IMG/VR virus record: IMGVR_UViG_3300046694_000136 | Coordinates: 124,001-188,000 of that record | Strand: one strand, 5' to 3' | Length of the DNA: 64,000 bases | Part shown: piece by piece, positions 15,561-61,953 of the stretch | Layout of the letters: every line of letters starts with the position of its first letter | How positions within the stretch are numbered: position 1 is the stretch's first letter | The notes under the pieces: generated by a model | What the model saw: the letters and a program-made list of their open reading frames with translations, nothing else | Told to the model about the DNA's origin: nothing | Databases searched by the model: none | Position numbers and translations under genes: made by a program

Positions 15561-15615
15561 TGCAGTTTAATACCGCATTAACTTGCATAAATCACTTTCT
15601 CGACAGGAATGTATC

Positions 15616-17811
15616 ATGGACAAAGAAAATTTCAAGAAGGTTACGGCGAGTGTTGATAAGTCGCCGAACTACTTCCACAACACCCGCCAAGCTCTGACCA
15701 ACGGTAACCTTGCCTCGGTAAGCGGCAACGAAAGCTACACCGAATTCCAAAAGGCCCTGGACTCTGTTGACGGCTCCGAGTCGCTCAAAGTCAAGCAGAT
15801 GTTCACCGGCTTCAACCAGAACAACTTCGACGCGATCAAAAGCGCCTGGGGCAAGGACATCGTCGCACGCGCCAAGAGCGTTATCGATGGTTACGACGCC
15901 GACGGTCAGAAATTCGCCGCGGTCGCTGGTCAGGAAGGCTTCTCCCTCCAGAACTTTGGTGGCGACGAGCAATCGATCCGCGCAGCCAACCTGGTACTGA
16001 ACGCCCAGTCCCACCTGCAAACCAAAGGCGCTGATGCCCTGTACGCTCCGATTTCGATCGGCTACAAGGAAGAAGGCGTTGAAATGACCGTTCGTGCCGC
16101 CGGCCTGGGTACCTATACCTACGGTGCTACCGCGTTCCAATCCGCTTCCGATCTGCGTCCGGTCTTCGGCCTGCTGCGTTCCGGCGACATGTTCCAGGAA
16201 GAAGTCCTCGCTGTGTACCCTGTGTACCCTGCTGACGACGCTGCTGACGAACGCCGCTTCTTCGCTCCTGCTGCACTGTCCACTCCAGTCCCTGTCAAGT
16301 ACATGGCTGGCGATGCCTACGGCCGTCAGGAACACCTGACCCAGGACTTGGTTGTTCCGGTAACCATCCCGAACTTCCTGGCCCTGACCCAGACCCCTGG
16401 TCAACAGCCGTGGACCAACACCGACGAACTGGAGTCCAACTCCATCGCGGTCAAGCGCATCGGCGTGAAAGTCATGATCGGTTCGACCGAGAAGACCTTC
16501 TTCATCAACACTGCTTCGATGTCGAACAACACCTTCGGCGTCGGTGGTCAGGTACAGAGCTCCGACGAGCGTACTCTGAACCTGAAAATCTCCCAGTACC
16601 CAGGTTTCTCGGTACAGGACAAAGACGGCAACGAAATTGGCGAGACCATCTTCGCCGACTTCAAAGCCGCCGGTTACGAGCCACGCCTTCAGCTGCAACT
16701 GACTGGTACCTACCAGCGTCAGCGCGGTGACATCACCCTGCTCGCAGGTGCGGTGAACATCGCTGAGCTGTACGAGACCAGCACCAAGGTTGTCGTCAAG
16801 TACGGCAAAGCTTCGAGCCAGCAGCAAGGTCTGTTCAACACCCTGAAGTCGGGTACCGTGGTTTCCGCCCGTACCGGCCAGAACGTCAACAACACCAACC
16901 GTGGCAACTTCGGTTACCGCGTAGAAGTGTACGATGCCTACAAGCATCTGTCCGTTCAGCGCCGTTCGCCGATCTCGGTTCAGTACCCAGTGAGCGACAA
17001 GGACGTGTACCAGGAATCTCTGGACTTCGCCCTCAAGCAAATGTCGATCATCATCAACAACCAGTGCTCCAAGACTGCGTTCGTTGAAGCGCGTCGTCAC
17101 ACCGAGTACATCAAGCAGATCGACGGTTCCGCTGTTGTTGCCAACACCCAGGGCTCCGAAGTTCTGGCTGGTCAGCACTTCCTCACTCCAACCTGCGTTG
17201 ATCGCAAGCTGAAGCTGAGCGACGTGGTTTCGGCCAACGGTTCGTACGACGTCTGGAACGCAGTGTCCGCTGCGATCACCAACGAAATCGCCGACATCAT
17301 CGCTGCGCTGTACACCCGTTCGGGCCTGGCGGCTGTTGCCGAGTACACCACCGGTGATCTGAAAGGCAAATGGTCGGTTGTTGCTCACCAGAACATCAGC
17401 CGCTTCATCTTCCGTTCGGGCGACGCTCGTACTGTTGGTCCGGTTGATCAAGCCAACGTTGTTGAAACCAACTTCGACTCGGAAATCGGTTACGTCACCA
17501 TCGTACCGAAGAACGATTCGTCGTCGGAAGTCATCGACCCGCTGGCTGGTATCGGCGTCGTTGTGACCAAAGAGAACATTGTCGTACAAGGCAACGTGAC
17601 TCGTGGCAACAAAGACTTCGGCGTTGTTATGACGCTGCCGACCTACAAGCACTGGGGCCTGAACGTGGTCATCGGTCGTCTGTTCATCGAAGACGCCCAT
17701 CTGTTCCTGACCGACGACGGCTTGATCAACGACCTGGCTGTTAAAGCAGTTCGTCTGGCCAACGCCAACGAGATCGTGCTGACTCCGGTCGTTGACCCAA
17801 ACGCACCGTGA
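15616..17811 (+). CDS. Major capsid protein (phiKZ gp120-like)
   Basis: About 731 aa from ATG 15616 (AGGA RBS), strongest codon bias in the window, propeptide with VSGNES/VDGSES/VAGQEG sites, and helicase-gp119-MCP-x-RNAP synteny. Confidence 0.9.
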   Translation: MDKENFKKVTASVDKSPNYFHNTRQALTNGNLASVSGNESYTEFQKALDSVDGSESLKVKQMFTGFNQNNFDAIKSAWGKDIVARAKSVIDGYDADGQKFAAVAGQEGFSLQNFGGDEQSIRAANLVLNAQSHLQTKGADALYAPISIGYKEEGVEMTVRAAGLGTYTYGATAFQSASDLRPVFGLLRSGDMFQEEVLAVYPVYPADDAADERRFFAPAALSTPVPVKYMAGDAYGRQEHLTQDLVVPVTIPNFLALTQTPGQQPWTNTDELESNSIAVKRIGVKVMIGSTEKTFFINTASMSNNTFGVGGQVQSSDERTLNLKISQYPGFSVQDKDGNEIGETIFADFKAAGYEPRLQLQLTGTYQRQRGDITLLAGAVNIAELYETSTKVVVKYGKASSQQQGLFNTLKSGTVVSARTGQNVNNTNRGNFGYRVEVYDAYKHLSVQRRSPISVQYPVSDKDVYQESLDFALKQMSIIINNQCSKTAFVEARRHTEYIKQIDGSAVVANTQGSEVLAGQHFLTPTCVDRKLKLSDVVSANGSYDVWNAVSAAITNEIADIIAALYTRSGLAAVAEYTTGDLKGKWSVVAHQNISRFIFRSGDARTVGPVDQANVVETNFDSEIGYVTIVPKNDSSSEVIDPLAGIGVVVTKENIVVQGNVTRGNKDFGVVMTLPTYKHWGLNVVIGRLFIEDAHLFLTDDGLINDLAVKAVRLANANEIVLTPVVDPNAP

Positions 17812-23144: not shown

Positions 23145-23178
23145 AAAGTAGTTTAATCGCGATTAAATTAAGATTCAG

Positions 23179-23206
23179 CCTACTCCTGGGTCATACCGGG
23201 GGTAGG
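23179..23206 (+). terminator. Rho-independent terminator
   Basis: CCTACTCCTGG...CCGGGGGTAGG followed by TCTTTCTTTT. Confidence 0.75.
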
Positions 23207-23248
23207 TCTTTCTTTTCTGTACCCACCCCACTAATAAGGGATTTGTTT

Positions 23249-23866
23249 ATGTCACGTAACGATATCGATATTGATGTAGCGCGCCAAGAGATCATTGATA
23301 ACTTTGCGCATCACTGGGAATTGAACGACAAAGGTCACCGACAAGATCACTTTGAAGAAGTGTTCCAGACCGCCAAGCATATCAACGAAGTACTGGAACT
23401 CGGGTATCCGCAAATCGATATGTTGTTCGCAGCTTACTTCCATGACTTCTTTGCCTGGACACGTGTTAACCACCACACACTGGCCTGGGATTATTTCCGT
23501 ACTGCTGACCATCCTGTCATCCTTAAGTATTACGGAGACCTGCCTCGACGCATTCGAGACACAGTAGCGGATGCATGCCGTGAACACCGGGCGTCTTTCA
23601 AAGGAGAGTTCGCTCATCGGTTCGCTGAACTGATCAACTCTGCTGACCGTGGGTTCCCTGGTCACGTACAGCGACTGTTACAGCGTACCTACAACCATCG
23701 CCTCACTACGTACCCGGATATCTCTCCTGAGGAGCGTATGAAGCTCTGCGTCGAGCATATGAAAGAGAAAGCCGGTAGCAAGGGCTACGCTCGTTATCCA
23801 GATCTGTACACGCGGGTATTCGGTAAAGAGCTGAAAGCCCAAATGGAAGAGATCGATAATCTGTAA
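23249..23866 (+). CDS. HD-domain phosphohydrolase
   Basis: GHRQDH...YFHD...NHH...EHR...SAD metal-binding pattern. Confidence 0.85.
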   Translation: MSRNDIDIDVARQEIIDNFAHHWELNDKGHRQDHFEEVFQTAKHINEVLELGYPQIDMLFAAYFHDFFAWTRVNHHTLAWDYFRTADHPVILKYYGDLPRRIRDTVADACREHRASFKGEFAHRFAELINSADRGFPGHVQRLLQRTYNHRLTTYPDISPEERMKLCVEHMKEKAGSKGYARYPDLYTRVFGKELKAQMEEIDNL

Positions 23867-23883
23867 CGCCAATTTGTTTCAAA

Positions 23884-23893
23884 CCCATATTAC
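23884..23893 (+). promoter_or_regulatory. Early-type promoter core (CCCATATTAC)
   Basis: Copy of the shared motif. Confidence 0.6.
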
Positions 23894-23955
23894 TTGGGTG
23901 CAACACCGGAGCTAGAACATTGGGTTCTTTTTCCATTACTAAAGAGGAAACACAA

Positions 23956-24516
23956 ATGGATCGCGCACTTCGCAACGTAAACGATGTGGCTGCCAATACA
24001 TCCAATAACCAATCGGGTTATCCCGAGTTGTCCAACGTCCAACTGGCTACTGAAGTCCAGAAGCTCAGCGGGTATAACCACTTCTCCAGTAGCACTGCTA
24101 GCTTGCTGGAAGAGGTGGTGCGTCGCCTGGTATGTAGTCAAGGTACCGTGATCAACCTTTCGGGAACTCCCAGTTCCTCCAGTTCTCTGGATCCGTTAGA
24201 CCAACCGGTGACCTTTGGTTCCACCCTCACCTTGAGGGATCTATCGGAAGCCACGTACACGGTTACCTTGGATCCACGTAAACACCTTAAGAAGTCTGAC
24301 TACCCCAGCCTGGCAAAACAGTTAAACAAGCAAGGACTTACTGATGATCTCGCAGAGCTTGCTTTGAGTGATTTGAAGAAATGCTACAACGTTACCGCTA
24401 TCGCCAAACAAGCGCCGGCTAGTTTCGATGTAATGTTTTATTGGTTGCAGAGCGGGGTTATGTACTGGACCTGGTGTGACGCTAAGGATCCAAAGAATAC
24501 CGCTGCTGATATTTAA
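23956..24516 (+). CDS. Hypothetical early protein with the shared N-terminal helical module
   Basis: ATG 23956 with GAGGA RBS. Confidence 0.75.
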   Translation: MDRALRNVNDVAANTSNNQSGYPELSNVQLATEVQKLSGYNHFSSSTASLLEEVVRRLVCSQGTVINLSGTPSSSSSLDPLDQPVTFGSTLTLRDLSEATYTVTLDPRKHLKKSDYPSLAKQLNKQGLTDDLAELALSDLKKCYNVTAIAKQAPASFDVMFYWLQSGVMYWTWCDAKDPKNTAADI

Positions 24517-24544
24517 GTTGCAGAATCCTTCAGATCTATATAAC
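24515..24544 (+). promoter_or_regulatory. Extended early promoter AAGTTGCAGA-N10-TCTATATAAC
   Basis: Nearly identical element with the same spacing at 61861-61890. Confidence 0.7.
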
Positions 24545-24605
24545 TAGGGTGAATATAAACGTGGTAGTTTTGCTACGTTCACCTTTATTGTACTGTAGGA
24601 GCTTT

Positions 24606-24950
24606 ATGATGACTAACCTTAACCTCACCCCAGAACAAATCAAAACTGTATCGATCCGTGGTCAACGCGAAGCCGGCTTCAAATCCTCCCACATCGTTGG
24701 TGCTGTTGCAGGTGTTCTCACTGCCGCCGCCAACTACAACCAAGGTAGCTCCCTCGCAGGCGCTGCCGCTGGTGCTGCACTGGGCGGCGCCATGGGTTAC
24801 GCCATCGGCGACATCTTCGGCATCACCGACGATCTGGGTACCAGTGCTCGCATCCTCAACGGCGGCGTAGCAACTCTGGTGGGTGTATCGTTCAGCGGTC
24901 TCGCGACTGGTCTGGTCGATGCACTGGTACGTCCACAAGAAGCACAGTAA
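24606..24950 (+). CDS. Small glycine-zipper membrane protein
   Basis: AGGAG RBS; three Gly/Ala-rich hydrophobic helices with GxxxG repeats; homologous to the C-terminal part of 61954..63279. Confidence 0.75.
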   Translation: MMTNLNLTPEQIKTVSIRGQREAGFKSSHIVGAVAGVLTAAANYNQGSSLAGAAAGAALGGAMGYAIGDIFGITDDLGTSARILNGGVATLVGVSFSGLATGLVDALVRPQEAQ

Positions 24951-24957
24951 ATGACAA

Positions 24958-24979
24958 TAGGGGGTCTTCGGACCCCCTA
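24958..24979 (+). terminator. UUCG-loop terminator
   Basis: TAGGGGGTC-TTCG-GACCCCCTA followed by CGGTTATGTTTT. Confidence 0.85.
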
Positions 24980-25048
24980 CGGTTATGTTTTATTTTTCAC
25001 CGTAATACCAATCACTCGAGCTACATTCTTAATTACGTAACTGAGGTA

Positions 25049-26014
25049 ATGACAATGCGCAATGAATTCGGACACATGCACGCCGCCCAATACATCCAAC
25101 CTGGTTATCAGGATGCGTTCAAAAGACTCAGCGATGAACAGTTGCTGGAGCAGCTGAAGTCCATGGCGTGTTACGGGGATCACAACCAAACCACCCTGAT
25201 GTTGATCGGGGAGCTTTACCAGCGCGCTCAGCGTGCTTTCGGTAAGACCTTCATGCCGAGTGAAAAGGTCCATGGCGATCGTTACCTGTACACCTCGATC
25301 TACAAGGATGGGGTAATGACCCATTACTTTGTGGACGATCATGAAACCAAGTTGCTGGTAGACGGTGTCTTCGAACGTACAGAGTTCCTGTACACAGCCG
25401 AGGGGCTGGGCTTCGAAGGGGGTCCTCGCATTAGCGCCTTGCTGGATCTTGGCGAGGTGTTCACAGCGATTCGGGTTGACGAGAACGGCAAGCAGGTTGG
25501 CGAAGCGGTACGTTGCCACTTCGGCACCATTGCAGCTGCTCAAGGGTTCAACGCTAACCCGTTGCACATCTCGAAAACTCTCCCTCTGGGGATCTTCGAG
25601 ATCAACTTCAAATCACCCGCCGGACTCATGCGTCAGACCCTCAACGAAGCTCTGCTGAAAGCGGCCGAGACGGTTACGACCGATCCAGAGAAGCTTACAC
25701 GAATTCAGGAATTTGTGAATCAGTTCGATCTCTTGGAAGAGTACAGGATCTCGGTTGAAAAGGTGTTCAATGGATCGGAGATGGCCGGTGGGATGAACCT
25801 TATCCCTATCACCACTCAGATTCATGTGTTCCCGGCTGGTACCGGCGCGCCTGTCAAGTTCTTGACTGCGATGTATGGTGAAACAGTTCCCGGGTTCGTT
25901 GACCGGAACAAATACCCTGCGTTGTTCCTCAACCCAGAACCTAACGCCAACCATTATGCTCCTGGTGCGGGCGGCTTTGGCGGTCCAGGTGGTCCAGGTA
26001 CCCCTATCTGGTAA
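25049..26014 (+). CDS. Hypothetical early protein (shared N-terminal module; Gly/Pro tail)
   Basis: GAGGT RBS; a promoter-like GCTACATTCT lies at 25020. Confidence 0.75.
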   Translation: MTMRNEFGHMHAAQYIQPGYQDAFKRLSDEQLLEQLKSMACYGDHNQTTLMLIGELYQRAQRAFGKTFMPSEKVHGDRYLYTSIYKDGVMTHYFVDDHETKLLVDGVFERTEFLYTAEGLGFEGGPRISALLDLGEVFTAIRVDENGKQVGEAVRCHFGTIAAAQGFNANPLHISKTLPLGIFEINFKSPAGLMRQTLNEALLKAAETVTTDPEKLTRIQEFVNQFDLLEEYRISVEKVFNGSEMAGGMNLIPITTQIHVFPAGTGAPVKFLTAMYGETVPGFVDRNKYPALFLNPEPNANHYAPGAGGFGGPGGPGTPIW

Positions 26015-26028
26015 GTAGTCTGATAGTC

Positions 26029-26050
26029 GAGAGGAGCTAACCCTCCTCTC
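26029..26050 (+). terminator. Terminator
   Basis: GAGAGGAG-ctaacc-CTCCTCTC plus a T tract. Confidence 0.75.
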
Positions 26051-26078
26051 CTTTCTTTATTCTTGTTATGAGGTTTTT

Positions 26079-26870
26079 ATGAACAACGGTCAAGGCAGTA
26101 TCTTCGGCGGGGCTCTTCACGGCATGCCTCAAACACAGCTCGAGTTCAACAAGCACTTTAACCCAGCTCCTCCGGAGGTGGTCATCCAGACCCTGCACGA
26201 GATGGCTAATTGGGTCCCTATGACCAATCAGACCCTCTCGGTTATTCAGAATGCTGTAGGGTTGATCTCCCGACTCCAGCAAGATAACAAGGCAATGTCT
26301 GACGATAAGTACTGGAAGCTTCGTAAGTTCGGTGAGGAGATGCTTGCTCTAATTTCCATCCCGGCTGACGCGGGTCGTGAAAAGCGAGTGTTCTTCCACG
26401 ATTTTGAGACCGGTGAAGTCTACCTGGGGTTCCCTGCCGTTATGGGCAAAGACATCCCGCCCATCGTAATGAAGGCAACACTGGGAGTGGAAGCAGTTGT
26501 AACCCTGTCCCTTAACGAAGCCGTCGAGGCAACCAAGAAGATCTGCAATACCTTTGAATCCTGGGTATACGGGACGGGCCGCTTGGGGCTCAATGAAGAA
26601 GTCCCGCTTAACCCATTGTCCGGAGAAACTGAGTTGGATTGGGAGTTCACCATGGACCTCGGTGACAGCCTGTTCGAGAATGATTTCAAGGCCAGCTTCA
26701 TCTTTCTCGGAGAGCAAGCCCATATCGTAAGGCCGGACTTGGAATACGATACGTTCAAGGACAAGTTCAACCTTTGCGCTATCCTGAACGGTCCTAACCG
26801 ATCGGTAATGCGTCTCCGGGTGTTCTCGATCAACCAGCAGCAGTACTACGAATGGGTATTCCCTAAGTAG
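26079..26870 (+). CDS. Hypothetical protein (shared N-terminal module)
   Basis: GAGGT RBS; 263 aa. Confidence 0.75.
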   Translation: MNNGQGSIFGGALHGMPQTQLEFNKHFNPAPPEVVIQTLHEMANWVPMTNQTLSVIQNAVGLISRLQQDNKAMSDDKYWKLRKFGEEMLALISIPADAGREKRVFFHDFETGEVYLGFPAVMGKDIPPIVMKATLGVEAVVTLSLNEAVEATKKICNTFESWVYGTGRLGLNEEVPLNPLSGETELDWEFTMDLGDSLFENDFKASFIFLGEQAHIVRPDLEYDTFKDKFNLCAILNGPNRSVMRLRVFSINQQQYYEWVFPK

Positions 26871-26880
26871 TTGTTACGAG

Positions 26881-26902
26881 GAGGGGTGTTAGTTCACCCC
26901 TC
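26881..26902 (+). terminator. Terminator
   Basis: GAGGGGTG-ttagtt-CACCCCTC followed by TTTTATTTTTT. Confidence 0.85.
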
Positions 26903-26935
26903 TTTTATTTTTTGTACCTCATGGAGTTTGTCAAG

Positions 26936-27241
26936 ATGGCTGTTAGCAGAGAACCTCCGCTTTTAATGAACAACTGTCAAATCAACCCTGAGTGGGAAAG
27001 ATGGTTAAAGGCTAATTACCCCAATATCTCCACTGAAGCGACTAATGCCAACATTATCCTCAAGATGCTTTGCTTTCGGGCTACCATCGACATTGTACTC
27101 AAGGATAACTGGGACCATTACTCAACAGAAACCTTGGGACTGATTAAGGAACATCCTGAACACTGGGGGTTATTGCAAACCATTAACCCGCCTAAACCCA
27201 CCATGTTACAGCGGTTATTCCGGCGCTTTAAACGGGAATAA
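26936..27241 (+). CDS. Hypothetical protein
   Basis: ATG 26936 after GGAG. Confidence 0.65.
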   Translation: MAVSREPPLLMNNCQINPEWERWLKANYPNISTEATNANIILKMLCFRATIDIVLKDNWDHYSTETLGLIKEHPEHWGLLQTINPPKPTMLQRLFRRFKRE

Positions 27242-27300
27242 ATAAACACTCCACCTAAATCCTATGCACGTTCATATAACCGAACTCTATGGAGTCTCCA

Positions 27301-27957
27301 ATGGCTAAAGGTAACAGCGGTAACAGCAAACCAAACACCACCGCACCGGCTCAAGCAGCCGTCCCTGAAAACAAAGGCGTTCAGGAAGGTGCTGACAACA
27401 ACGTCATCGACCAAAACAACACTGGTGATCAGGCCAACCTCGGTGATCAGTTCGTGGTTCCGGCGGGCAAGGTTCTTATCACTCTCCCGGCTGACGTGAA
27501 CGAAGGCATTACCGAGTTCGTGGGTCAGCTTAAAGCAGCTTACTTCGATGCTGACGTGGACGCCCTCCTGACCGATCGCTTCAAACCAGAAGTCGACGAG
27601 ACCATCAACGAAGACCGTGGGTCCGACGACATCGTTCTGGTTACTGGCTTCGAACTAGCTTTCCCGCTGGACGCTCTGGCCGACGACATCACCCAAGGCC
27701 TGCTGGCCGTACAAAACGCTCTGGACACCCGCAGCGCTCCCGAAGGCCAAACCTTCCCGGAAGCACTGGTCGGTTTCCAATTCCCACTGACCGTACTGGA
27801 ACGTTACATCCAAGGCGTCCTGCACCAAGGCGTCCGTCTGGAAGACGTGGAACTGGTTATCGCCGACGCAGAAGCAGACTCCCATCTGAAAACGCTGAAC
27901 TTCTCGCGTCTTCTGCAAGGTCTGGCGCCGACCCACGTTTACCTGCGCTTCCTGTAA
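27301..27957 (+). CDS. Acidic, highly expressed protein (probably virion-associated)
   Basis: GGAG RBS; MCP-like codon bias; TATG late motif at 27263. Confidence 0.65.
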   Translation: MAKGNSGNSKPNTTAPAQAAVPENKGVQEGADNNVIDQNNTGDQANLGDQFVVPAGKVLITLPADVNEGITEFVGQLKAAYFDADVDALLTDRFKPEVDETINEDRGSDDIVLVTGFELAFPLDALADDITQGLLAVQNALDTRSAPEGQTFPEALVGFQFPLTVLERYIQGVLHQGVRLEDVELVIADAEADSHLKTLNFSRLLQGLAPTHVYLRFL

Positions 27958-27976
27958 CGCGCGTACATAGTCATAG

Positions 27977-28007
27977 CCTACCCTCAGCCCTAAGGGCTGA
28001 GGGTAGG
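27977..28007. terminator. Bidirectional terminator
   Basis: CCTACCCTCAGCCC-taa-GGGCTGAGGGTAGG between convergent genes. Confidence 0.85.
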
Positions 28008-28031
28008 TACTATGGTTTTTTTTTGCTTCTG

Positions 28032-31000
28032 TTACGGTTTGAACGGCTGATATCCAGGATCGTTCTTACTAGGGTCCGTCCCATCTTTGTTGTCATCGTC
28101 CGCGCTAGCGTCCTTGTTAGCGTCGTCATCGTTAACAGGTGGTTCTTCGTCCTCTTCCTCTTCTTCCTCCTCACCGCCACCACCAGCTAGGGTGTCGTCG
28201 TCGACCAAAGCCGGATCATCAGTCAGAGCTGGATCTGCATCAGGATCAACAGGAGGGTTATCAATGCCATCACCGTTGGTCAGACTATCGTCAGGTTCTG
28301 CTTGGCCAGTGGTTTTATCCTTGGCTTGAAGCAGGTCTTGCTTAGACTTCTCGATATTCTTCCAATGCTTCTTGAGAACAGCCACGTCGGCCTTATCCAT
28401 ACCAACCATCATGGCAGCCAAGAACTCACCAGTGTTCTGGTGTTGCTGAACTACTTCGTTCACCAGAGACGCCAAGCCACCACCTTCACCACCCGCCAAT
28501 ACATCATCAAACGGCATTGGTAGGTTGTACTTGATGTAAGCCTGTCTGAGGAATACAGACTGGATCTGACCTTTCAGCTTAGCAAGGCTGTGCGGGTCAA
28601 TGTCTTCCTCAGGACTACCATCGTCGCCCTTAATGAAGCCCAGTAGTTTACCAACGTGAGACAACGTCCCGTTACCACCTGCCATGTCCATCCAGTTCTT
28701 AACCAGCTCATTAACCACCTGAAGGCTGTCTTTGATCTTGTTAGTGGTTTCAATACTGGTAGGAGTAGGAAGCTTGCAGATAACGTTACTGATGAAGTCA
28801 GCCAGAATTAGGTTGATCTGCTGTTGCTCGTTACCTTCCAATGTTTGACCACTGTCAGGTTTCCAAAGCTTCTTCTGTTCACGGATCTTGGCAATCAAGT
28901 CTTTCAGCAGCGGTGCGTTGACATACGCGTGCTTACGCTGGAAGTCAGCGAGGAACCCACCCAACTCAGCCTGATAGCTAACCACCTGGTTCAACAACAT
29001 CTGGTGCTCGGCCAAAGCCTCGATCTGGAAGTTGTTCTGATCGTCAGAGATATCCAGCCAGCTCTTTTGAAGTTGGAGGTAACTGGCGATCTTGTTCAAC
29101 AGTTCATTACGACTGTTTTGGTCAACCCCAGGGAAGTTGTTACGATCCATGTGGTCAATCTGAACATCGTGACCCGGGAAGTACGGGTTCTCACCCGGAT
29201 CTACCTTAACGGTCAACGACGCTTCCCGTAGGGAGTCAATCATCTGCGGAACAGACAACTGAGTCATCATCAGGATGTTGTGAACAGTCGGGTTAGCTTC
29301 AAAGAACGTGTTACGCGCGTTAGCGATGTCAGCCATCGGTTCAGGAGCGTTAGCGTTCAGACGAACAGTCATCATGGAGTGAGGGGTTGCCTTCTCCAAG
29401 TTAGACAGAGTGTCAGCCAAATCAAACATTGCCAGTCGAGTGATATGTGACTTCGCCATGTTCACCAAGGATTGACCGATGCCCAAGCGGTTGAAGTTCA
29501 ACGCCATGTAGGTGAGAGCCTCTCCAGGGATGTACAGACAACGAACGCCTTGACCACGGAACATGCGCTGCAAGAAGATCTTGTTGACCTCCTCGTCGAT
29601 CTCAATGCTGATGTTGTCACCATTACCACCCAACACCGACGCACTGAATGCACGGATAAGGTTAGCTTTAGAGACTTCAGCAAACTCACGCATGTCGAAA
29701 TCACATTCCTTACCTTCCTGCACCTTACGCAAGTTCTGGATAAGGCTGTTCATGCTACCGTTCTTAGCTGGAGCGCCTGACTTCTCCTTGTTAGCACCGA
29801 TCGACTGGTAGAACTCGAAGTCGTTGGTGTTCTTCAGGAAACTGCCATCTTCAGTATCCAGCAACGCGATGTAGTCAGGAGCAGTACGTCCATTACCGCC
29901 GTTGAAGTGGATAGGGATCAAACACTCACTCGGCAAGTGGAACGTCAGACCACGACCGTACGGAGCAGTATCCAGAGCACCGCTAGGCTTAACGTACTGA
30001 ATGAACTGCGACGCAATATTCCGGCTACGGAACATCTGGGCGCTGACTTGCTCGATCTGACCTTCGCTCAAGTTCTGAGTCTTAGGTGAGGACGCGGCAG
30101 TCTTACCCTTAGTGACGTTACCCTTCTGTCCACCGGCTGTGGTGTCTTTCTTTTCAGGTTTCTTCGGGGAGGTGTCTGCTTCTTCAGGTTTGTCTTTGAA
30201 AGACTCACCAATCAACAGATCCAAGCTCTCGAAACCAGAGACTTGCTTAACCCGTTCATCACGACGACCAGCACTGATCTTCTGAAGGAACAGAGCAGAA
30301 GGGTTATCCGTGAAAGTGATGTTGATCAGCTTCTCAGGGTCTTCTGCGTCACTGAACAGACGGAACTCGTCACCAGCATAGCTCGGACCTTTACCGAAGA
30401 TGCTTTCAATACCCGAAACCTGCTGATGGGACTCATGAGGGTTCTTAATGAAAGCGCCCTTGTTCTTCAGCAGAACTTTCTTATCGGTAGTGATTGTGAA
30501 CTCTTTGCTGAACTCTTCCTGAGCCTGACCGATGAAACTCTCAACACCAGCTACTCCTGCTTCCCGCAGTTGACTACCGTTGATCAGGTAATCCAGACCC
30601 GGGCGGCTCAAGTTAAACAGTGCGTAACTCCCCGTATTAATGAGAAGATCGCTCACTATTTTCTTCAAATCCCCCTCGATCTTATAGCCGTTAGTGTAAT
30701 AGGCGTCCCAGATGGCCACCAATTCCGTATGCAATTTTGCACTTTTGTATGGTGACGACTGGGTGTCATAACTGAGGATTTTGTCCTGCCGACCATTGGG
30801 GTACAGCAGCATTGTCTGCCAGATGGTTTCGGCTTTCCCGATGTACGGGGTGATGGCCCTGAGGTCAGTCGCGGCGTTGATGTTGTTGCTGATGATGCTA
30901 CTCAGCTTCTCCAACTTGAACTGACTGATCCCTTTATCGGATTTGCCGGTAAGCTCATCCCGTTCAGGAGTACGAGCGTTCTTAGGAACAGCGCGAGCCA

Positions 31001-31103
31001 GAGTGGAAGCCAACACGGGGTTTACAGTTTTCAGATCTGCCCGGATCCTGGACAGGTCAATGTTGCTATTGCCGATCGTCAGATCTTTTGTATGTCTATT
31101 CAC
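28032..31103 (-). CDS. Probable portal protein (phiKZ gp129-like) with a long acidic C-terminal tail
   Basis: About 1020 aa; GTG 31103 with GAAGGGG RBS (TTG 31127 is an alternative). Has VAGVES/VSGIES/VSGFES processing sites, so it is head-located. Divergent from a gp128-like gene. Assignment from recall. Confidence 0.6.
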   Translation of the reverse strand: MNRHTKDLTIGNSNIDLSRIRADLKTVNPVLASTLARAVPKNARTPERDELTGKSDKGISQFKLEKLSSIISNNINAATDLRAITPYIGKAETIWQTMLLYPNGRQDKILSYDTQSSPYKSAKLHTELVAIWDAYYTNGYKIEGDLKKIVSDLLINTGSYALFNLSRPGLDYLINGSQLREAGVAGVESFIGQAQEEFSKEFTITTDKKVLLKNKGAFIKNPHESHQQVSGIESIFGKGPSYAGDEFRLFSDAEDPEKLINITFTDNPSALFLQKISAGRRDERVKQVSGFESLDLLIGESFKDKPEEADTSPKKPEKKDTTAGGQKGNVTKGKTAASSPKTQNLSEGQIEQVSAQMFRSRNIASQFIQYVKPSGALDTAPYGRGLTFHLPSECLIPIHFNGGNGRTAPDYIALLDTEDGSFLKNTNDFEFYQSIGANKEKSGAPAKNGSMNSLIQNLRKVQEGKECDFDMREFAEVSKANLIRAFSASVLGGNGDNISIEIDEEVNKIFLQRMFRGQGVRCLYIPGEALTYMALNFNRLGIGQSLVNMAKSHITRLAMFDLADTLSNLEKATPHSMMTVRLNANAPEPMADIANARNTFFEANPTVHNILMMTQLSVPQMIDSLREASLTVKVDPGENPYFPGHDVQIDHMDRNNFPGVDQNSRNELLNKIASYLQLQKSWLDISDDQNNFQIEALAEHQMLLNQVVSYQAELGGFLADFQRKHAYVNAPLLKDLIAKIREQKKLWKPDSGQTLEGNEQQQINLILADFISNVICKLPTPTSIETTNKIKDSLQVVNELVKNWMDMAGGNGTLSHVGKLLGFIKGDDGSPEEDIDPHSLAKLKGQIQSVFLRQAYIKYNLPMPFDDVLAGGEGGGLASLVNEVVQQHQNTGEFLAAMMVGMDKADVAVLKKHWKNIEKSKQDLLQAKDKTTGQAEPDDSLTNGDGIDNPPVDPDADPALTDDPALVDDDTLAGGGGEEEEEEEDEEPPVNDDDANKDASADDDNKDGTDPSKNDPGYQPFKP

Positions 31104-31129
31104 GACATTAAACCCCTTCGAGTCCAATT

Positions 31130-39259: not shown

Positions 39260-42200
39260 ATGCAGACTCCAATTGTCAGACAGTTCCGGGATGACATTCT
39301 TCACACCAATCCCGAGAACCAGATCCGAGGGGAACCGTTTACTACGGAAACCCCCGGAGAGTACACCCGCATCATTGTTCCTCTTAAGTCCCCGTTCTTC
39401 ATCAAAAGTCTGAAGCTGTACTTCAAGAACGGGGAACCAATGACTGAGGAGCATTGGGAGATCTATCGGATCATGCCTAAGTTGACTAGCCTTGCTGCTC
39501 AAGGTGTCGCGTGCATGATTCGTTTGAAAGACCCTACCATCGTGGAAGGGTTCTTGGATTACGACGTAGTGGGCGAGTTCACGTTGTTTGATACAGGCAT
39601 GATGAGCCTGATCTTCACAGCGACTGAAGATGACCGGATGATCGATTTCTTTAACCTGAAGAACCGTCCGATCGTTTACCCGCCAACGATGCACCATCAC
39701 TCGCTGCTTTATGACTACATGGCGTTTGAGGATACCATCCACCTGTTAAACTCGATCAGTACCTACGCCGACCAGCTGGGTACCCCGTTGATCGAAATCA
39801 AGATCTCGCAGTACTTCTCGAACTTCAACCATTACTTGGCGCTATATAAAGCTGAGTTGTTCAAGTTCCTCAACGATCACAAAGCGACCTACAACCACCA
39901 CGGCATCAAAGCCATTCAGGTGGGTTTGGAAAAGGTAGACAACTTTGAGACGGCGGTGAAGCCGATTGATCTGTTGAGTGGTCGGGATGACATGCACCTG
40001 ACTGTTCAGGGGTTGGCAACTATTGTTAACCAGACAGGCTTTGATTCCGGTGAGTATCTGGGTAAGGGCACTCTGCCTATCTCTCAGTACGGCAACACCA
40101 ACTTCATTCCACCAGACATCGACGGTTCCTTTGAAGGGCTCGGTGGCGTGTATGAAGCGGCAGGTATGTGTCAAGAGACTGACGGTTCGGTACTGTATCT
40201 GCAAAACCGGATGGACGGTCGTGTACGGGGCTTGTACTTCTCCACCTTGAAGGGTGCTGTACCTGGCTCAGGTGCGCTGGATTACACCTTCAGTAACTTC
40301 CGTTACACTCACCCTCGTTTTGTTGTTGACGGGGCTACAGTGGACCGGATTGCTCAAGGTAGCGGTAACGAAGTGATCTTGGTAGGGGACAGTATCAACA
40401 ACCTCTACTACATAGGACTGACCAACGGTTCGTTTGACCCTGCTAAGCACGTTTACTCCCGGATCGATTTGTCGCCTCTGCTGGCCGCTATCTACAGCAA
40501 CCCCAACAGATCGGCTAACCCGATTATGCGTAACATCAACATCGCTCGGATAGGGTCTTGGATCTACCTGTTCCTAGGTGCGTCTGTACCCGACCCAGTC
40601 TCGGATCCATCGCAGCTGATCTCTCTGCGCTACAAACACATCTTCCGTGTGAACGTAGCTGACGTAGCGGCCACTATTCCAGTGACCCCTGTTCGTCAAT
40701 GGATTACTTACATGGATGCCGATGGTGCACAGTGGAACGGAAGTTACTACTGGCGCTGGCACGATGAGATCAAAGACGGGAACGGTAACTTTCTGAAAGC
40801 GTTGTTCAGCTTCCAGCAACCATTGAACCCGTTTGCGTACATCGGTATCTCTTCGGTGATGACCTTGGCGGAACAGGACCCTAACCGACCTGGGATCTAC
40901 GCCTTGAAGTTTGTGGGCGGTTACTTCGCTTCGTTCTTCTCGGAACAGTTCAACGCTAGTTTCAACTATGCCCCGGAAATCACGTACGACTTCAACCCTG
41001 CTACGGGGGTAATGACTCGGACTAACCTTTCCAACCTCCCAGTGATCAACTTTGGTGCGAATCCTGTAATCCCTGCCGGGTATACCCAAAACATGGCAAT
41101 GATTAAAATGGTCCGCTACTTTGAAGGTCAGGGGATGGAGGTATTGGAGACTGGACGCATCCTCTCGTCAGCTGCGGCTGGTGCGTTCGGTTATCCTCGT
41201 CTGGCTGGTGTCCTAACTCCACCTAATGCGCCGACTCGTTACAACACCATCGCGCGTTTGTGGGGGACTGCTCAGGGCTGGGCGTACACCGATCTTTTAC
41301 CAGAAAAGGTGCAGCAGCCATTGGCATCAGGTGGTTATGTGCGGTGCGTGTTGTACAAGCCAGGGGCGGAGATGTACATCGCCTCTAAACCTGAAAATCC
41401 TAACCAGCTTCAGCTGTACTACCGTGCTGTCTCGGGTGGTTATGCTATTCGTGATGGGGTTAACAACATCTACGTTGGGGGTATGTATTCCCGTCCGCTC
41501 GCCTCCATTGTGAGAAAGGTCAACGCTCCGTTTGGTTTGGGGGCAATGACTGTATCGGTTCCGGGTAGTCAGGTGGGCGCTTACGGGGTTGAGATTGGGC
41601 ACTCTGCTTTCTGTATGGGAGTTCAAAAGAAATACTTCAACCGGGAGATGGAAGGTAACGCGTGGGTTGGGGGTGTAGCTGCTGACGACATCATCATGAT
41701 GGCCAGTAACAGTGAACGTCTGGAAGCTGACGGGTCGATCACTTTGGTACCGGGTGTGGAGATCATGTACCCTGCTTGGATTGTTGAGTCTTTGAAAGCT
41801 CAGGTCCAGCACCCCGATATCAAGAACCGTGGTCGTGCTTGTTTTGTGACGATCTGTGATCCGACGTTCTCGTCTGGAGCATTCGGCTGGCTGCCGATCA
41901 CTGTGGTAGTTAGTTACCTCGACACTTATGGTCTCCCTAATACGGATACTGTGTACACCACCTGCATGACCATTAACGCCTCTTACTCGGCGTCTGGTAA
42001 CAGACAAGTGGTGACTGGTGTGAGTGTGATCGACATTATCCACGCCGAAAAGCCATCCGCTTCTTATCAAGGCGCCATTCCAGTTGTCTATGGCTCGGAT
42101 CCTGCGAATGAGGGTGCGCAAACCACGCTGGGCTCAATGCGGACGTACTACTACCTGAATGGGAATAGTCTAGAAGTCTATTTCTCGGCAGGTGTCCGTA

Positions 42201-42823
42201 GCCTTGGGATGTTCGCTCACCAGATGAGCAACTACCACTTTGGCTATAACAACCGGGACACTCGTCGCTGGAGTTGGGCGCAGATGGAGGATGACGGGGC
42301 TAACCTTGGCGCATTATCGGTTACCCCGGATAACGGGATTGCTCGGGCTTATGCGTGGAAAGACGTCAGTGGTGGTGCCGCTACTATCATCAACGGTCCG
42401 GCGTATAAAGCGCTTCTGGGTTCTAGTTATCAGTCGTTAGGTTGGGGGGTATACTTCCGTGCGACTACCATCGCAGTGTTCAACGGGAAACAGTACTCTT
42501 ATCCACCGGGGATGATTGACCTTCGTGACATTGATCCCTCTCCTGGTAACAAGATCTTCTACGTCTACGCAGCACTCCGCAACGAGCTGCCGGTCTATGA
42601 GGTGACACAGGAGAAGCGCCTGGAATCCGCGTTCCAAGTTTGGGTAGCGAAGATCACCACCAACGACAGGCAAGTCCTGCAAATTGAACGGTTTAATGTC
42701 TTTACCATTAACGGTAGCCGCATTTCTGAAATTAAACGAGGGAACAGTATTCCTGCATCTTCTGGGTTGGTCAACGTAGAAGGTCAGATCCCTTGGTTGC
42801 GTTCTGATGAAATGCTGTCATAA
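39260..42823 (+). CDS. Long tail fibre / receptor-binding protein, paralogue 1 (phiKZ gp145/146-like)
   Basis: HHG.KAIQVGLEKVDNF fibre motif, GSFEGLG block and C-terminal IDLRDIDP domain. Confidence 0.7.
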   Translation: MQTPIVRQFRDDILHTNPENQIRGEPFTTETPGEYTRIIVPLKSPFFIKSLKLYFKNGEPMTEEHWEIYRIMPKLTSLAAQGVACMIRLKDPTIVEGFLDYDVVGEFTLFDTGMMSLIFTATEDDRMIDFFNLKNRPIVYPPTMHHHSLLYDYMAFEDTIHLLNSISTYADQLGTPLIEIKISQYFSNFNHYLALYKAELFKFLNDHKATYNHHGIKAIQVGLEKVDNFETAVKPIDLLSGRDDMHLTVQGLATIVNQTGFDSGEYLGKGTLPISQYGNTNFIPPDIDGSFEGLGGVYEAAGMCQETDGSVLYLQNRMDGRVRGLYFSTLKGAVPGSGALDYTFSNFRYTHPRFVVDGATVDRIAQGSGNEVILVGDSINNLYYIGLTNGSFDPAKHVYSRIDLSPLLAAIYSNPNRSANPIMRNINIARIGSWIYLFLGASVPDPVSDPSQLISLRYKHIFRVNVADVAATIPVTPVRQWITYMDADGAQWNGSYYWRWHDEIKDGNGNFLKALFSFQQPLNPFAYIGISSVMTLAEQDPNRPGIYALKFVGGYFASFFSEQFNASFNYAPEITYDFNPATGVMTRTNLSNLPVINFGANPVIPAGYTQNMAMIKMVRYFEGQGMEVLETGRILSSAAAGAFGYPRLAGVLTPPNAPTRYNTIARLWGTAQGWAYTDLLPEKVQQPLASGGYVRCVLYKPGAEMYIASKPENPNQLQLYYRAVSGGYAIRDGVNNIYVGGMYSRPLASIVRKVNAPFGLGAMTVSVPGSQVGAYGVEIGHSAFCMGVQKKYFNREMEGNAWVGGVAADDIIMMASNSERLEADGSITLVPGVEIMYPAWIVESLKAQVQHPDIKNRGRACFVTICDPTFSSGAFGWLPITVVVSYLDTYGLPNTDTVYTTCMTINASYSASGNRQVVTGVSVIDIIHAEKPSASYQGAIPVVYGSDPANEGAQTTLGSMRTYYYLNGNSLEVYFSAGVRSLGMFAHQMSNYHFGYNNRDTRRWSWAQMEDDGANLGALSVTPDNGIARAYAWKDVSGGAATIINGPAYKALLGSSYQSLGWGVYFRATTIAVFNGKQYSYPPGMIDLRDIDPSPGNKIFYVYAALRNELPVYEVTQEKRLESAFQVWVAKITTNDRQVLQIERFNVFTINGSRISEIKRGNSIPASSGLVNVEGQIPWLRSDEMLS

Positions 42824-46602: not shown

Positions 46603-46649
46603 ATGAAATAGGGGGAGGGTTTCCTCCCCTTTACCGATTGGAGCTGTCT

Positions 46650-61837: not shown

Positions 61838-61860
61838 GTCTATTATGCATTTTATTTTTT

Positions 61861-61890
61861 AAGTTGCAGATTTACTCATGTCTATATTAC
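61861..61890 (+). promoter_or_regulatory. Extended early promoter AAGTTGCAGA-N10-TCTATATTAC
   Basis: Contains an exact TATATTAC; twin of 24515-24544. Confidence 0.75.
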
Positions 61891-61953
61891 TCGTGTGAAT
61901 AAACAACGCAATGTTTTAAACTCATTGTCTGTTAACTGTACTTGGAGAACGTT

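What the first reader, a model, noticed from the sequence alone, without database searches (positions are those of the whole stretch)
24019..26264. Three neighbouring early proteins share a ~35-aa N-terminal module on unrelated bodies
Seen, ungapped: YPE-LSNVQLATEVQKLSGYNHFSSSTASLLEEVVRR (24028), FKR-LSDEQLLEQLKSMACYGDHNQTTLMLIGELYQR (25127) and FNP-APPEVVIQTLHEMANWVPMTNQTLSVIQNAVGL (26166). The aromatic, hydrophobic, M/L-x-x-Y/W and T-x-x-L/V-I/L pattern is conserved, and the downstream regions show no evident similarity. Inference: a helical-hairpin tag for hetero-oligomerisation or for targeting diverse effectors to one site, such as the phage nucleus/early vesicle or a host complex.
Basis: partly seen in the sequence, partly recalled or inferred. 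Interest (0 to 1): 0.6.

Follow-up and report, generated by a model that had tools for sequence, protein, structure and literature searches.

The report
Shared N-terminal domain in jumbo-phage genes
Two of the three neighbouring genes of this EL-like jumbo phage carry a real, previously unnamed 40-50-residue two-helix domain that relatives attach to a dozen unrelated protein bodies, probably as a common docking handle. The third gene does not demonstrably carry it and is instead a distant paralogue of the first through its C-terminal domain.

Summary
The window is part of a 234.5 kb jumbo phage distantly related to Pseudomonas phage EL.

The first two segments (genes 23956-24516 and 25049-26014) belong to a genuine domain. 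Its pattern is an aromatic, then L-[ST]-[DN]-x-[QED]-L, a loop of variable length, then L-h-x-x-h-x-x-R-L. Against 21 independent copies from other phages:
- the family of gene 1 gives hhalign probability 95%, E 4.5e-8;
- the family of gene 2 gives 65%, E 6e-5;
- neither score is reached by any of 60 column shuffles.

All ten EL-like genomes searched hold 1-3 copies. Most are N-terminal, followed by Pro/Ser/Lys-rich linkers, on at least 12 unrelated bodies or as stand-alone 71-87 aa proteins such as EL gp72. Most lie in one hypervariable island between a core gene and the portal-like gene. Only about 36 clusters carry the domain among 1.84 billion proteins, and Pfam and PHROGs do not describe it.

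The third gene (26079-26870) fails every test for the module. It does share a C-terminal domain with gene 1 (probability 91-94%, E about 1e-7), so the bodies are not all unrelated.

Function is inferred: a docking or targeting handle with an unknown partner. A resemblance to the LEM domain is weak and sub-threshold.

The parts
23956..24516 (+). Gene 1 (186 aa, P0029). The likely true start is the ATG at 23956, preceded by AAGAGGA; the mechanical ORF starts at a TTG at 23920.
   Evidence: All 17 relatives begin MDRAL or MERAL.
24016..24132 (+). Module copy in gene 1 (residues 21-59): helix, 6-residue loop, helix.
   Evidence: hhalign against 21 independent copies gives probability 94.9%, E 4.5e-8, reached by 0 of 60 shuffles. 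A leave-family-out HMM gives E 0.058, and 0.0016 for the L005 orthologue. AF2 predicts helices 27-38 and 45-61.
24139..24228 (+). Ser/Pro-rich disordered linker of gene 1 (residues 62-91).
   Evidence: AF2 pLDDT is below 50 for residues 64-91. Its length and sequence vary among orthologues.
24229..24513 (+). C-terminal alpha/beta domain of gene 1 (residues 92-186). It is homologous to the C-terminus of gene 3.
   Evidence: pLDDT is 80-88. hhalign of A6 against A5 gives probability 91%, E 9.4e-7 over residues 111-177. The shuffle control reaches the score in 0 of 60. No fold match was found.
25049..26014 (+). Gene 2 (321 aa): module, then an orphan body that ends in a Gly/Pro-rich tail.
   Evidence: Orthologues are in L004, L005 and L020, plus P0073. 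No Pfam or PHROG family matches.
25115..25228 (+). Module copy in gene 2 (residues 23-60).
Evidence: hhalign against 21 independent copies gives probability 65%, E 6.1e-5, reached by 0 of 60 shuffles. It scores 51.8 bits in the six-frame search of its own genome with A2, which includes this copy.
26079..26870 (+). Gene 3 (263 aa): disordered residues 1-28, a three-helix N-terminal unit (32-91), a beta-rich middle, and a C-terminal domain related to gene 1.
   Evidence: 24 proteins reach E <= 0.001, the query itself among them, all 243-280 aa.
26157..26264 (+). It is not a demonstrable copy of the module. It covers helix 32-45 and the first half of the long helix 50-74, and no linker follows it.
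   Evidence: hhalign E-values are 0.015, 0.0085 (first helix only) and 0.59. 2 of 60 shuffles reach its score. HMM and genome searches do not find it.
26673..26867 (+). C-terminal domain of gene 3 (residues about 199-263; by the model, from about 188). It is homologous to that of gene 1.
   Evidence: Both models have the same order of elements: strand, three helices, two strands.
23877..23900 (+). Phage promoter-like motif 56 nt upstream of the gene 1 start.
   Evidence: About 25 sites lie on the + strand of the genome and 1 on the - strand. It is the same motif as EL's annotated 'putative phage promoter'.
24528..24551 (+). Second copy of the promoter-like motif, upstream of the Gly-zipper gene.
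24609..24950 (+). Glycine-zipper membrane-type protein between genes 1 and 2. It is not part of the module family, but the relatives inspected, other than EL, encode a protein of this type at the head of the island.
   Evidence: sub-threshold matches to P22_gp7 and Gly-zipper families. Searches show the synteny.
24958..24979 (+). Terminator-like hairpin after the Gly-zipper gene. Similar hairpins lie at 26029-26050 after gene 2 and 26878-26905 after gene 3.
   Evidence: 13 such sites found against 4.9 +/- 2.0 in shuffles.

Best explanation
Genes 1 and 2 each begin with one copy of a clade-specific, autonomous two-helix domain of about 38-50 residues. Helix 1 starts with a capping box, L-[ST]-[DN]-x-[QED]-L. 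A loop of 6 to about 20 residues follows. Helix 2 ends in a nearly invariant R-L.

In EL-like jumbo phages this domain is joined to many unrelated bodies, usually through a flexible Pro/Ser/Lys-rich linker, or stands alone. The genes are exchanged within one hypervariable island.

The most likely mechanism is inferred, not shown. The domain would be a protein-protein docking handle that brings different accessory bodies to one conserved partner, either phage-encoded or host.

Gene 3 is best read as a distant paralogue of gene 1. It has kept the C-terminal domain, and its N-terminal helices have either diverged beyond recognition or have another origin.
For: Shown:
- 27 copies from 13 phage loci align in register.
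- The profile tests are significant and backed by shuffle controls.
- All ten genomes searched hold 1-3 copies.
- An exhaustive search of 1.84 billion representatives gives 43 hits at E <= 0.001, about 36 of them real, 71-525 aa long, nearly all N-terminal.
- No known domain is fused to any of the ten long hits scanned against Pfam.
- The bodies fall into at least 12 groups with no detectable relation, except the families of genes 1 and 3.
- The N-terminus of the gene 1 type sits on bodies of 186, 302 and 524-525 aa.
- Stand-alone versions exist: EL gp72, and proteins of 79 and 85 aa.
- AF2 predicts a disordered linker after the module.
- The genes occupy the same genomic slot in unrelated samples.
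- The net charge of the module is mostly zero or negative, which argues against DNA binding.
Against: - No partner is identified.
- Nothing here shows binding.
- The module is internal or C-terminal in a few proteins: a family of 499-629 aa, one 324-aa protein, and L009 13731-14294. It is therefore not strictly an N-terminal tag.
- Conservation of an N-terminus in a fast-evolving paralogous family does not by itself prove a targeting role.
- The pLDDT of the module is only about 70-75.
Confidence: 0.45

Rival explanations
1. Relic of common descent. The genes are a rapidly diverging paralogous family. The N-terminus is simply the slowest-evolving part, perhaps needed for folding, stability or regulation, with no shared partner or destination.
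For: Genes 1 and 3 are distant paralogues through their C-terminal domain. The genes cluster in one island.
Against: Bodies of very different length and predicted structure show no trace of relation. The same N-terminus of the gene 1 type sits on bodies of 186, 302 and 524-525 aa. Stand-alone modules and internal copies point to domain shuffling.
Confidence: 0.22
2. The module is a LEM/HeH-like helix-extended-loop-helix domain. It would bind nucleic acid or a DNA-bridging factor and so tether the bodies to DNA.
For: - Pfam LEM is the only family matched by more than one module copy (2 of 22, best E 0.044).
- Its best six-frame hit in this whole genome falls on helix 1 of the gene 2 module (12.1 bits), and in another genome on a stand-alone module.
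- The emerin LEM domain is the top PDB hit of a 79-aa module protein, aligned over the whole domain (E 1.2).
Against: - All scores are about half of the 24-bit cut-off, and E is about 0.05 or above.
- Control genomes give hits of that strength too.
- SAP and HeH profiles find nothing.
- The AF2 model matches ordinary antiparallel hairpins.
- The modules are neutral to acidic.
- Helix 1 also resembles generic helix-turn-helix first helices (P0072).
Confidence: 0.1
3. The module is a capsid-targeting or propeptide signal. It would load the bodies into the prohead as internal or ejected proteins, like the T4 capsid-targeting sequence or the phiKZ inner-body propeptides.
For: The island lies among head genes: the phiKZ-type major capsid protein at 15583-17811 and the portal-like virion protein at 28032-31127. 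The neighbouring Gly-zipper protein weakly resembles the P22 gp7 ejection protein.
Against: - Reading the alignments, I found no conserved protease-type cleavage motif after the module.
- Gene 1 carries a promoter motif that resembles early promoters.
- There are no virion proteomics for any carrier.
Confidence: 0.1
4. The module is a signal for docking on, or import into, the phage nucleus or the early vesicle.
For: The nearest cultured relatives belong to the phiKZ/EL group. The architecture of tag, linker and cargo would suit such a signal.
Against: In the phages studied, import uses surface patches and no terminal signal has been found (PMC11087766; PMC12908238). I found no detectable relative of phiKZ chimallin or PicA in this genome. 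There are no localisation data.
Confidence: 0.08
5. Chance resemblance of amphipathic helices.
For: For gene 3 this is the simplest reading. Its pairwise scores are within the random range, its profile tests are not significant, and the signature residues are not conserved in its family.
Against: For genes 1 and 2 it is excluded by the profile comparisons and shuffle controls and by the clade-wide alignment.
Confidence: 0.05

Closest known systems
LEM domain (Pfam PF03020; emerin, LAP2, MAN1), of the helix-extended-loop-helix group
   Same: Both are about 40 residues with two helices. Helix 1 opens with aromatic-x-x-L-S-D-x-E-L, an aromatic residue ends helix 1, a Gly/Pro-containing loop follows, and helix 2 is basic in some copies. 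LEM is the best, though non-significant, match in Pfam and the PDB.
   Different: Scores are 12-13 bits against a 24-bit cut-off. The loop length differs, with 0-12 extra residues. The predicted packing looks like an ordinary hairpin. LEM is a metazoan domain that binds BAF, and no BAF-like partner is known here.
Capsid-targeting sequences and propeptides of internal head proteins (T4 IPI-III and Alt; phiKZ and SPN3US inner-body or ejection proteins). This comparison rests on my own knowledge and on the abstract of PMC5694885.
   Same: A shared N-terminal element sits on different bodies, and the genes lie near head genes.
   Different: The module here is a folded domain of 40-50 aa rather than a short peptide. 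No conserved cleavage site was seen. No packaging evidence exists. Gene 1 has a promoter motif of the early type.
Polymorphic effector architectures with a conserved N-terminal trafficking domain and variable C-terminal bodies (for example LXG, MIX and PAAR-linked toxins). This comparison rests on my own knowledge.
   Same: The logic is the same: one conserved N-terminal handle, a linker, interchangeable C-termini, and clustering in variable islands.
   Different: There is no sequence relation. These are phage-encoded intracellular proteins. No secretion apparatus is implied, and none of the bodies is recognisable as a toxin or an enzyme.
[quoted passage not shown]
   Same: It is a system of the same broad phage group that must recognise many different cargo proteins.
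   Different: Known cargo recognition uses surface patches and no terminal signal. No PicA relative was detected here.

Membership tests
EL-like two-helix module (unnamed; alignment A2) | Helix 1 signature: aromatic-x-x-L-[ST]-[DN]-x-[QED]-L-x-x-x-L | tested here: met
   Genes 1 and 2 have it. Gene 3 does not: its own sequence reads P-A-P-P-E-V-V and its family reads T-T-E-E-G-I.
EL-like two-helix module (unnamed; alignment A2) | Helix 2 signature L-h-x-x-h-x-x-R-[LA], with the Arg invariant | tested here: met
   The Arg is the only invariant column across the 22 copies, and it is present in genes 1 and 2. In the family of gene 3 the matching position is mostly His.
EL-like two-helix module (unnamed; alignment A2) | Significant profile match to copies from other phages | tested here: met
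   The family of gene 1 gives E 4.5e-8 and that of gene 2 gives E 6.1e-5, each reached by 0 of 60 shuffles. The family of gene 3 gives E 0.038-0.59, reached by 2 of 60 shuffles, so it is not met for gene 3.
EL-like two-helix module (unnamed; alignment A2) | Autonomous unit followed by a flexible linker | tested here: met
   Gene 1 has a disordered stretch at residues 64-91, and Pro/Lys-rich stretches follow many copies. For gene 2 no model was made. In gene 3 the helices run straight into a third helix.
LEM domain (PF03020) | Score at or above the curated cut-off of 24 bits | tested here: not met
   The best scores are 12.1-12.7 bits. 2 of 22 copies match, best E 0.044.
LEM domain (PF03020) | Match over both helices and the loop | tested here: inconclusive
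   The profile matches cover positions 1-18 only. One single-sequence alignment to emerin spans the whole domain, but at E 1.2.
LEM domain (PF03020) | Binding to BAF or DNA | not testable with these tools
   This needs a biochemical assay.
SAP (PF02037) and HeH (PF12949) motifs | Any profile match in five module-bearing genomes | tested here: not met
   No match at E <= 10.
Capsid-targeting sequence or prohead-protease propeptide | Conserved cleavage motif at the end of the shared element | tested here: not met
   Reading the alignments, I found no conserved small-x-Glu site after helix 2.
Capsid-targeting sequence or prohead-protease propeptide | Presence of the carriers in virions | not testable with these tools
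   No proteomic data exist for any carrier.
   Genes 1 and 3 share a C-terminal domain: probability 91%, E 9.4e-7 on the full alignments, and 94%, E 1.3e-7 on the C-terminal parts. The body of gene 2 matches neither (E 0.5 and 0.052).

The most novel reading that the evidence does not exclude
The module would be a linear, transferable address tag. It would send diverse accessory proteins of EL-like jumbo phages to one subcellular structure, such as the phage nucleus shell, the early vesicle or the prohead. That would be the first sequence-defined targeting signal in this phage group, where none has been found so far. Stand-alone mini-proteins such as EL gp72 might then act as competitors or regulators of that address.
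Probability: 0.12. Interest if true: 0.8.

Novelty: new variant of a known kind. Interest (0 to 1): 0.5.

Why it matters
Jumbo phages of the phiKZ/EL group sort proteins between compartments. No sequence signal for this sorting is known.

A small domain that evolution has repeatedly moved onto unrelated bodies is the kind of element that could mark a shared destination or partner. It also gives a direct experimental handle, because EL is cultured and its gp72 is little more than the module.

Even if the module turns out to be only a docking domain for one phage or host protein, it still does three things:
- it defines a new domain family;
- it groups about 36 orphan protein clusters;
- it marks a hypervariable accessory island next to the portal gene.

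Tried and rejected
- **Complex prediction.** I ran the N-termini of genes 1 and 2 together (collected). The verdict was 'no answer' (score 0.08, mark 0.32). This is evidence neither for nor against binding.
- **Nucleotide and protein searches of GenBank phages.** Searching with the three genes found no match.
- **First IMG/VR scan.** Scanning with gene 2 found nothing.
- **Pfam and PHROGs.** Neither matches the three genes, ten other carriers, or the large proteins with internal copies.
- **Fold searches with both models.** PDB by Foldseek, PDB by VIA-align for gene 1, BFVD and the ESM Atlas for gene 3 gave nothing significant. The best Z was 4.7 and the best E was 4e-3.
- **ESM Atlas look-up of gene 2.** No usable hit.
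- **EL gp99.** This is the phiKZ014 homologue, a ribosome binder encoded in the equivalent EL island (PMC10914614). It is not related to gene 3.
- **Nuclear-shell and import genes.** phiKZ chimallin and PicA gave no hit in this genome. The best-scoring candidate ORF has no Pfam family. Nucleus formation is therefore not shown here.
- **Tandem module copies.** The short proteins of L004 and L020 that sit in the position of gene 1 looked by eye like two tandem copies. The HMM gives only E 0.87 or nothing, so I make no claim.
- **False positives of the big search.** These were an animal-type CARD/Death repeat protein (P0065), two low-complexity repeat proteins and a repeated helix-turn-helix protein (P0072). 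I set them aside and did not pursue P0065.
- They were not used.
Full report
**What the window is.** The window is bases 124001-188000 of a 234,503-bp virus record with direct terminal repeats. It encodes:
- a phiKZ-type major capsid protein (15583-17811);
- a divergent DnaB-like helicase;
- a head-tail joining protein and an NAD-dependent ligase;
- a split RNA-polymerase-like subunit, a portal-like virion protein (28032-31127, minus strand) and tandem paralogous virion proteins.

The 771-aa core protein just upstream of the finding is 42% identical to Pseudomonas phage EL gp81. It is more distantly related to proteins of Erwinia phages RisingSun and Joad and of Klebsiella jumbo phages. The phage is therefore an uncultured, distant relative of EL.

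**The genes.** The three ORFs are:
- 23920-24516, with a likely true start at the ATG at 23956, giving 186 aa;
- 25049-26014, 321 aa;
- 26079-26870, 263 aa.

A glycine-zipper protein (24609-24950) lies between the first two.

**Is the similarity more than chance?** With only the three sequences, just the pair of genes 1 and 2 is notable. BLASTP gives E 0.027. The ungapped score of 45 is reached by 0.05% of random pairs of N-termini from this genome. The two pairs that involve gene 3 score 7 and 17, values reached by 63% and 13% of random pairs. BLASTP finds nothing for them in that register.

**Bringing in relatives.** I used the conserved neighbour gene to fetch 17 loci from IMG/VR and JGI metagenomes, and added one Logan contig.

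In nearly all of them the stretch between the gp81-like gene and the portal-like gene is a variable island. In the relatives inspected, other than EL, the island holds an HD-domain protein, a Gly-zipper protein, or both. It then carries one to four proteins whose N-termini have the same pattern. EL itself has a longer island, and its one copy, gp72, lies elsewhere.

Twenty-seven copies align in register (tool alignment A2). The pattern is:
- an aromatic residue, then L-[ST]-[DN]-x-[QED]-L-(A)-x-x-L;
- an aromatic residue at the end of helix 1;
- a loop with 0-12 extra residues that often holds P-x-G;
- L-h-x-x-h-x-x-R-L, with the Arg invariant.

Genes 1 and 2 carry the short-loop form.

**Independent tests of genes 1 and 2.**
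- An HMM built without the families of genes 1 and 2 ranks the orthologue of gene 1 (E 0.0016) and gene 1 itself (E 0.058) right after the true members among 3326 six-frame ORFs. Gene 2 is weak in this test (E 0.94).
- Profile-profile comparison against the 21 independent copies gives probability 94.9%, E 4.5e-8 for the family of gene 1 (18 sequences). It gives 65%, E 6.1e-5 for the family of gene 2.
- Column-shuffled controls never reach these scores. Gene 1 scores 37.0 against 9.0 +/- 2.1. Gene 2 scores 25.6 against 8.6 +/- 2.0. That is 0 of 60 shuffles for each.

**Gene 3 fails these tests.**
- Its family has 24 proteins at E <= 0.001, the query among them, all 243-280 aa.
- hhalign gives E 0.015 and 0.0085, covering helix 1 only, against the module. 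It gives E 0.59 against the family of gene 1, and E 0.006 against the family of gene 2 with a 7-residue gap.
- 2 of 60 shuffles reach its score.
- The module HMM and a six-frame search of its own genome do not find it.
- The capping residues and the Arg are not conserved in its family.
- In the AF2 model (23-sequence alignment, mean pLDDT 77), helix 32-45 and the long helix 50-74 continue directly into helix 77-91. They form a three-helix unit with no linker.

**The bodies.**
- After the module, BLASTP groups the proteins only into orthologous sets.
- Among 136 profile comparisons of body groups, one pair stands out: genes 1 and 3.
- With deeper alignments their C-terminal 65-90 residues match. 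The full alignments give probability 91%, E 9.4e-7. The C-terminal parts give 94%, E 1.3e-7, with an observed score of 47.1 against 12.3 +/- 3.2 in shuffles, 0 of 60.
- Both models show the same order of elements there: strand, three helices, two strands.
- Genes 1 and 3 are therefore distant paralogues. That makes a diverged module in gene 3 conceivable, but it is not shown. I put it at roughly one in three.
- The body of gene 2 is related to neither.

**Architecture and distribution.**
- The AF2 model of gene 1 has a short N-terminal helix, the module (helices 27-38 and 45-61, pLDDT about 70-75), a disordered Ser/Pro-rich linker (64-91) and a confident alpha/beta domain.
- Many other copies are followed by Pro/Lys-rich stretches.
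- The exhaustive profile search of 1.84 billion representatives found only 43 proteins at E <= 0.001. About 36 are real, 71-525 aa long, and the module starts within the first 27 residues in all but two.
- None of the ten long hits scanned has a Pfam domain, apart from the false positives.
- The N-terminus of the gene 1 type occurs on bodies of 186, 302 and 524-525 aa.
- Two of these hits were traced to contigs, and both lie in the same island.
- All ten genomes searched hold 1-3 copies, and this genome holds exactly two.
- A few copies are internal, in an orphan family of 499-629 aa and a 324-aa protein, or C-terminal.

**What it resembles.**
- Pfam and PHROGs have no family for it.
- The only recurring weak signal is the LEM domain:
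  - 2 of 22 copies match, best E 0.044.
  - The best six-frame LEM hit in this genome falls on helix 1 of the gene 2 module (12.1 bits). In another genome it falls on a stand-alone module.
  - Emerin's LEM domain is the top PDB hit of that 79-aa protein, aligned end to end at E 1.2.
- All of this is far below the 24-bit cut-off, and control genomes give hits of the same strength.
- SAP and HeH profiles find nothing.
- The model superposes on ordinary helical hairpins at Z about 4.
- The modules are neutral to acidic.
- I treat LEM-likeness as a lead, not as membership.

**Expression.**
- A 24-nt motif (consensus about TTTCAAACCTATATTACTAGGGTG) occurs about 25 times on the + strand of the genome and once on the - strand. 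Where a downstream gene was identified, the site lies some 20-150 nt before its start, most often 40-50 nt.
- It matches EL's annotated 'putative phage promoter'.
- In form it resembles the early promoter consensus of phage AR9, which ends in ATATTAT-6N-G (PMC5312081).
- In EL one copy precedes gp98-gp99. gp99 is the homologue of phiKZ014, which is described as early-expressed (abstract of PMC11849849).
- In the island only gene 1 and the Gly-zipper gene have the motif. Genes 2 and 3 follow terminator-like hairpins and have none.
- 'Early' is therefore plausible for gene 1 and open for the other two.

**Mechanism.**
- Shown: the domain is real, clade-specific, portable and usually N-terminal with a linker.
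- Inferred: it is a protein-protein docking or targeting handle that brings interchangeable accessory bodies to one conserved partner.
- The partner and the site are unknown.
- In the nucleus-forming phages studied, import is reported to use surface patches rather than terminal signals.
- I could not detect chimallin or PicA relatives in this genome. The nucleus-address reading is therefore possible but unsupported.

**Verdict.** The third is not supported, and 'unrelated bodies' fails for genes 1 and 3. This is a new, unnamed domain family within a familiar architectural logic. It is moderately interesting and directly testable in phage EL.

No reads tool was used. No human-like contig was handled. 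One animal-type false positive (P0065) was set aside.

Noticed in passing
window 23877-23900 and 24528-24551; also about 10502, 12767, 17952 and 61874: A 24-nt phage promoter-like motif (about TTTCAAACCTATATTACTAGGGTG) occurs about 25 times on the + strand of the genome and once on the - strand. Where a downstream gene was found, the site lies some 20-150 nt before its start, most often 40-50 nt. It is the same motif as EL's annotated 'putative phage promoter'. In form it resembles the AR9 early consensus. The 80% DNA match between 24513-24556 and 61858-61901 is this motif.
   Followed up: partly
window 24609-24950: A glycine-zipper membrane-type protein. The relatives inspected, other than EL, encode one at the head of the variable island. 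It gives sub-threshold matches to the P22 gp7 ejection protein and Gly-zipper families.
   Followed up: partly
window 23178-23207, 24958-24979, 26029-26050, 26878-26905, 27976-28008: Terminator-like GC hairpins followed by T runs lie after most genes of the island (13 found against about 5 expected). This suggests separate short transcription units.
   Followed up: no
window 23243-23866: An HD-domain protein (phrog_3921, E 2e-37) precedes the island. Several relatives (L004, L005, L007, L017, L020, L024) have one in the same place, and L017 has two copies.
   Followed up: no
window 26912-27241 and 27289-27957: Two further orphan genes sit between gene 3 and the portal-like gene. The 109-aa protein is highly conserved in close relatives but absent from L005. 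The 222-aa protein has an acidic N-terminal half and is present in close and some more distant relatives.
   Followed up: no
window 39260-42823, 42877-46602, 46638-49541: Three tandem large virion or tail-type proteins. The first two are paralogous over their whole length (phrog_3573), and all three share the N-terminal domain (phrog_2163).
   Followed up: no
L010 15490-17328; L009 14329-15303; L028 762-2282; L029 1195-3084; L031 880-2379: Orphan proteins, 499-629 aa plus one of 324 aa, carry an internal copy of the module. The large ones are related to one another by phmmer. No homologue exists in this window's genome.
   Followed up: partly
L003 13379-14137 (EL gp99): The equivalent island of EL encodes gp99, the homologue of the ribosome-binding phiKZ protein 014 (PMC10914614), and an annotated promoter lies just upstream of gp98. 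It is unrelated to gene 3 despite its similar length.
   Followed up: yes
G000:C1:79886-81886 (outside the window): A 666-aa ORF preceded by the promoter-like motif at 79791 is the best, though non-significant, match to phiKZ chimallin (E 1.2). It has no Pfam family.
   Followed up: partly
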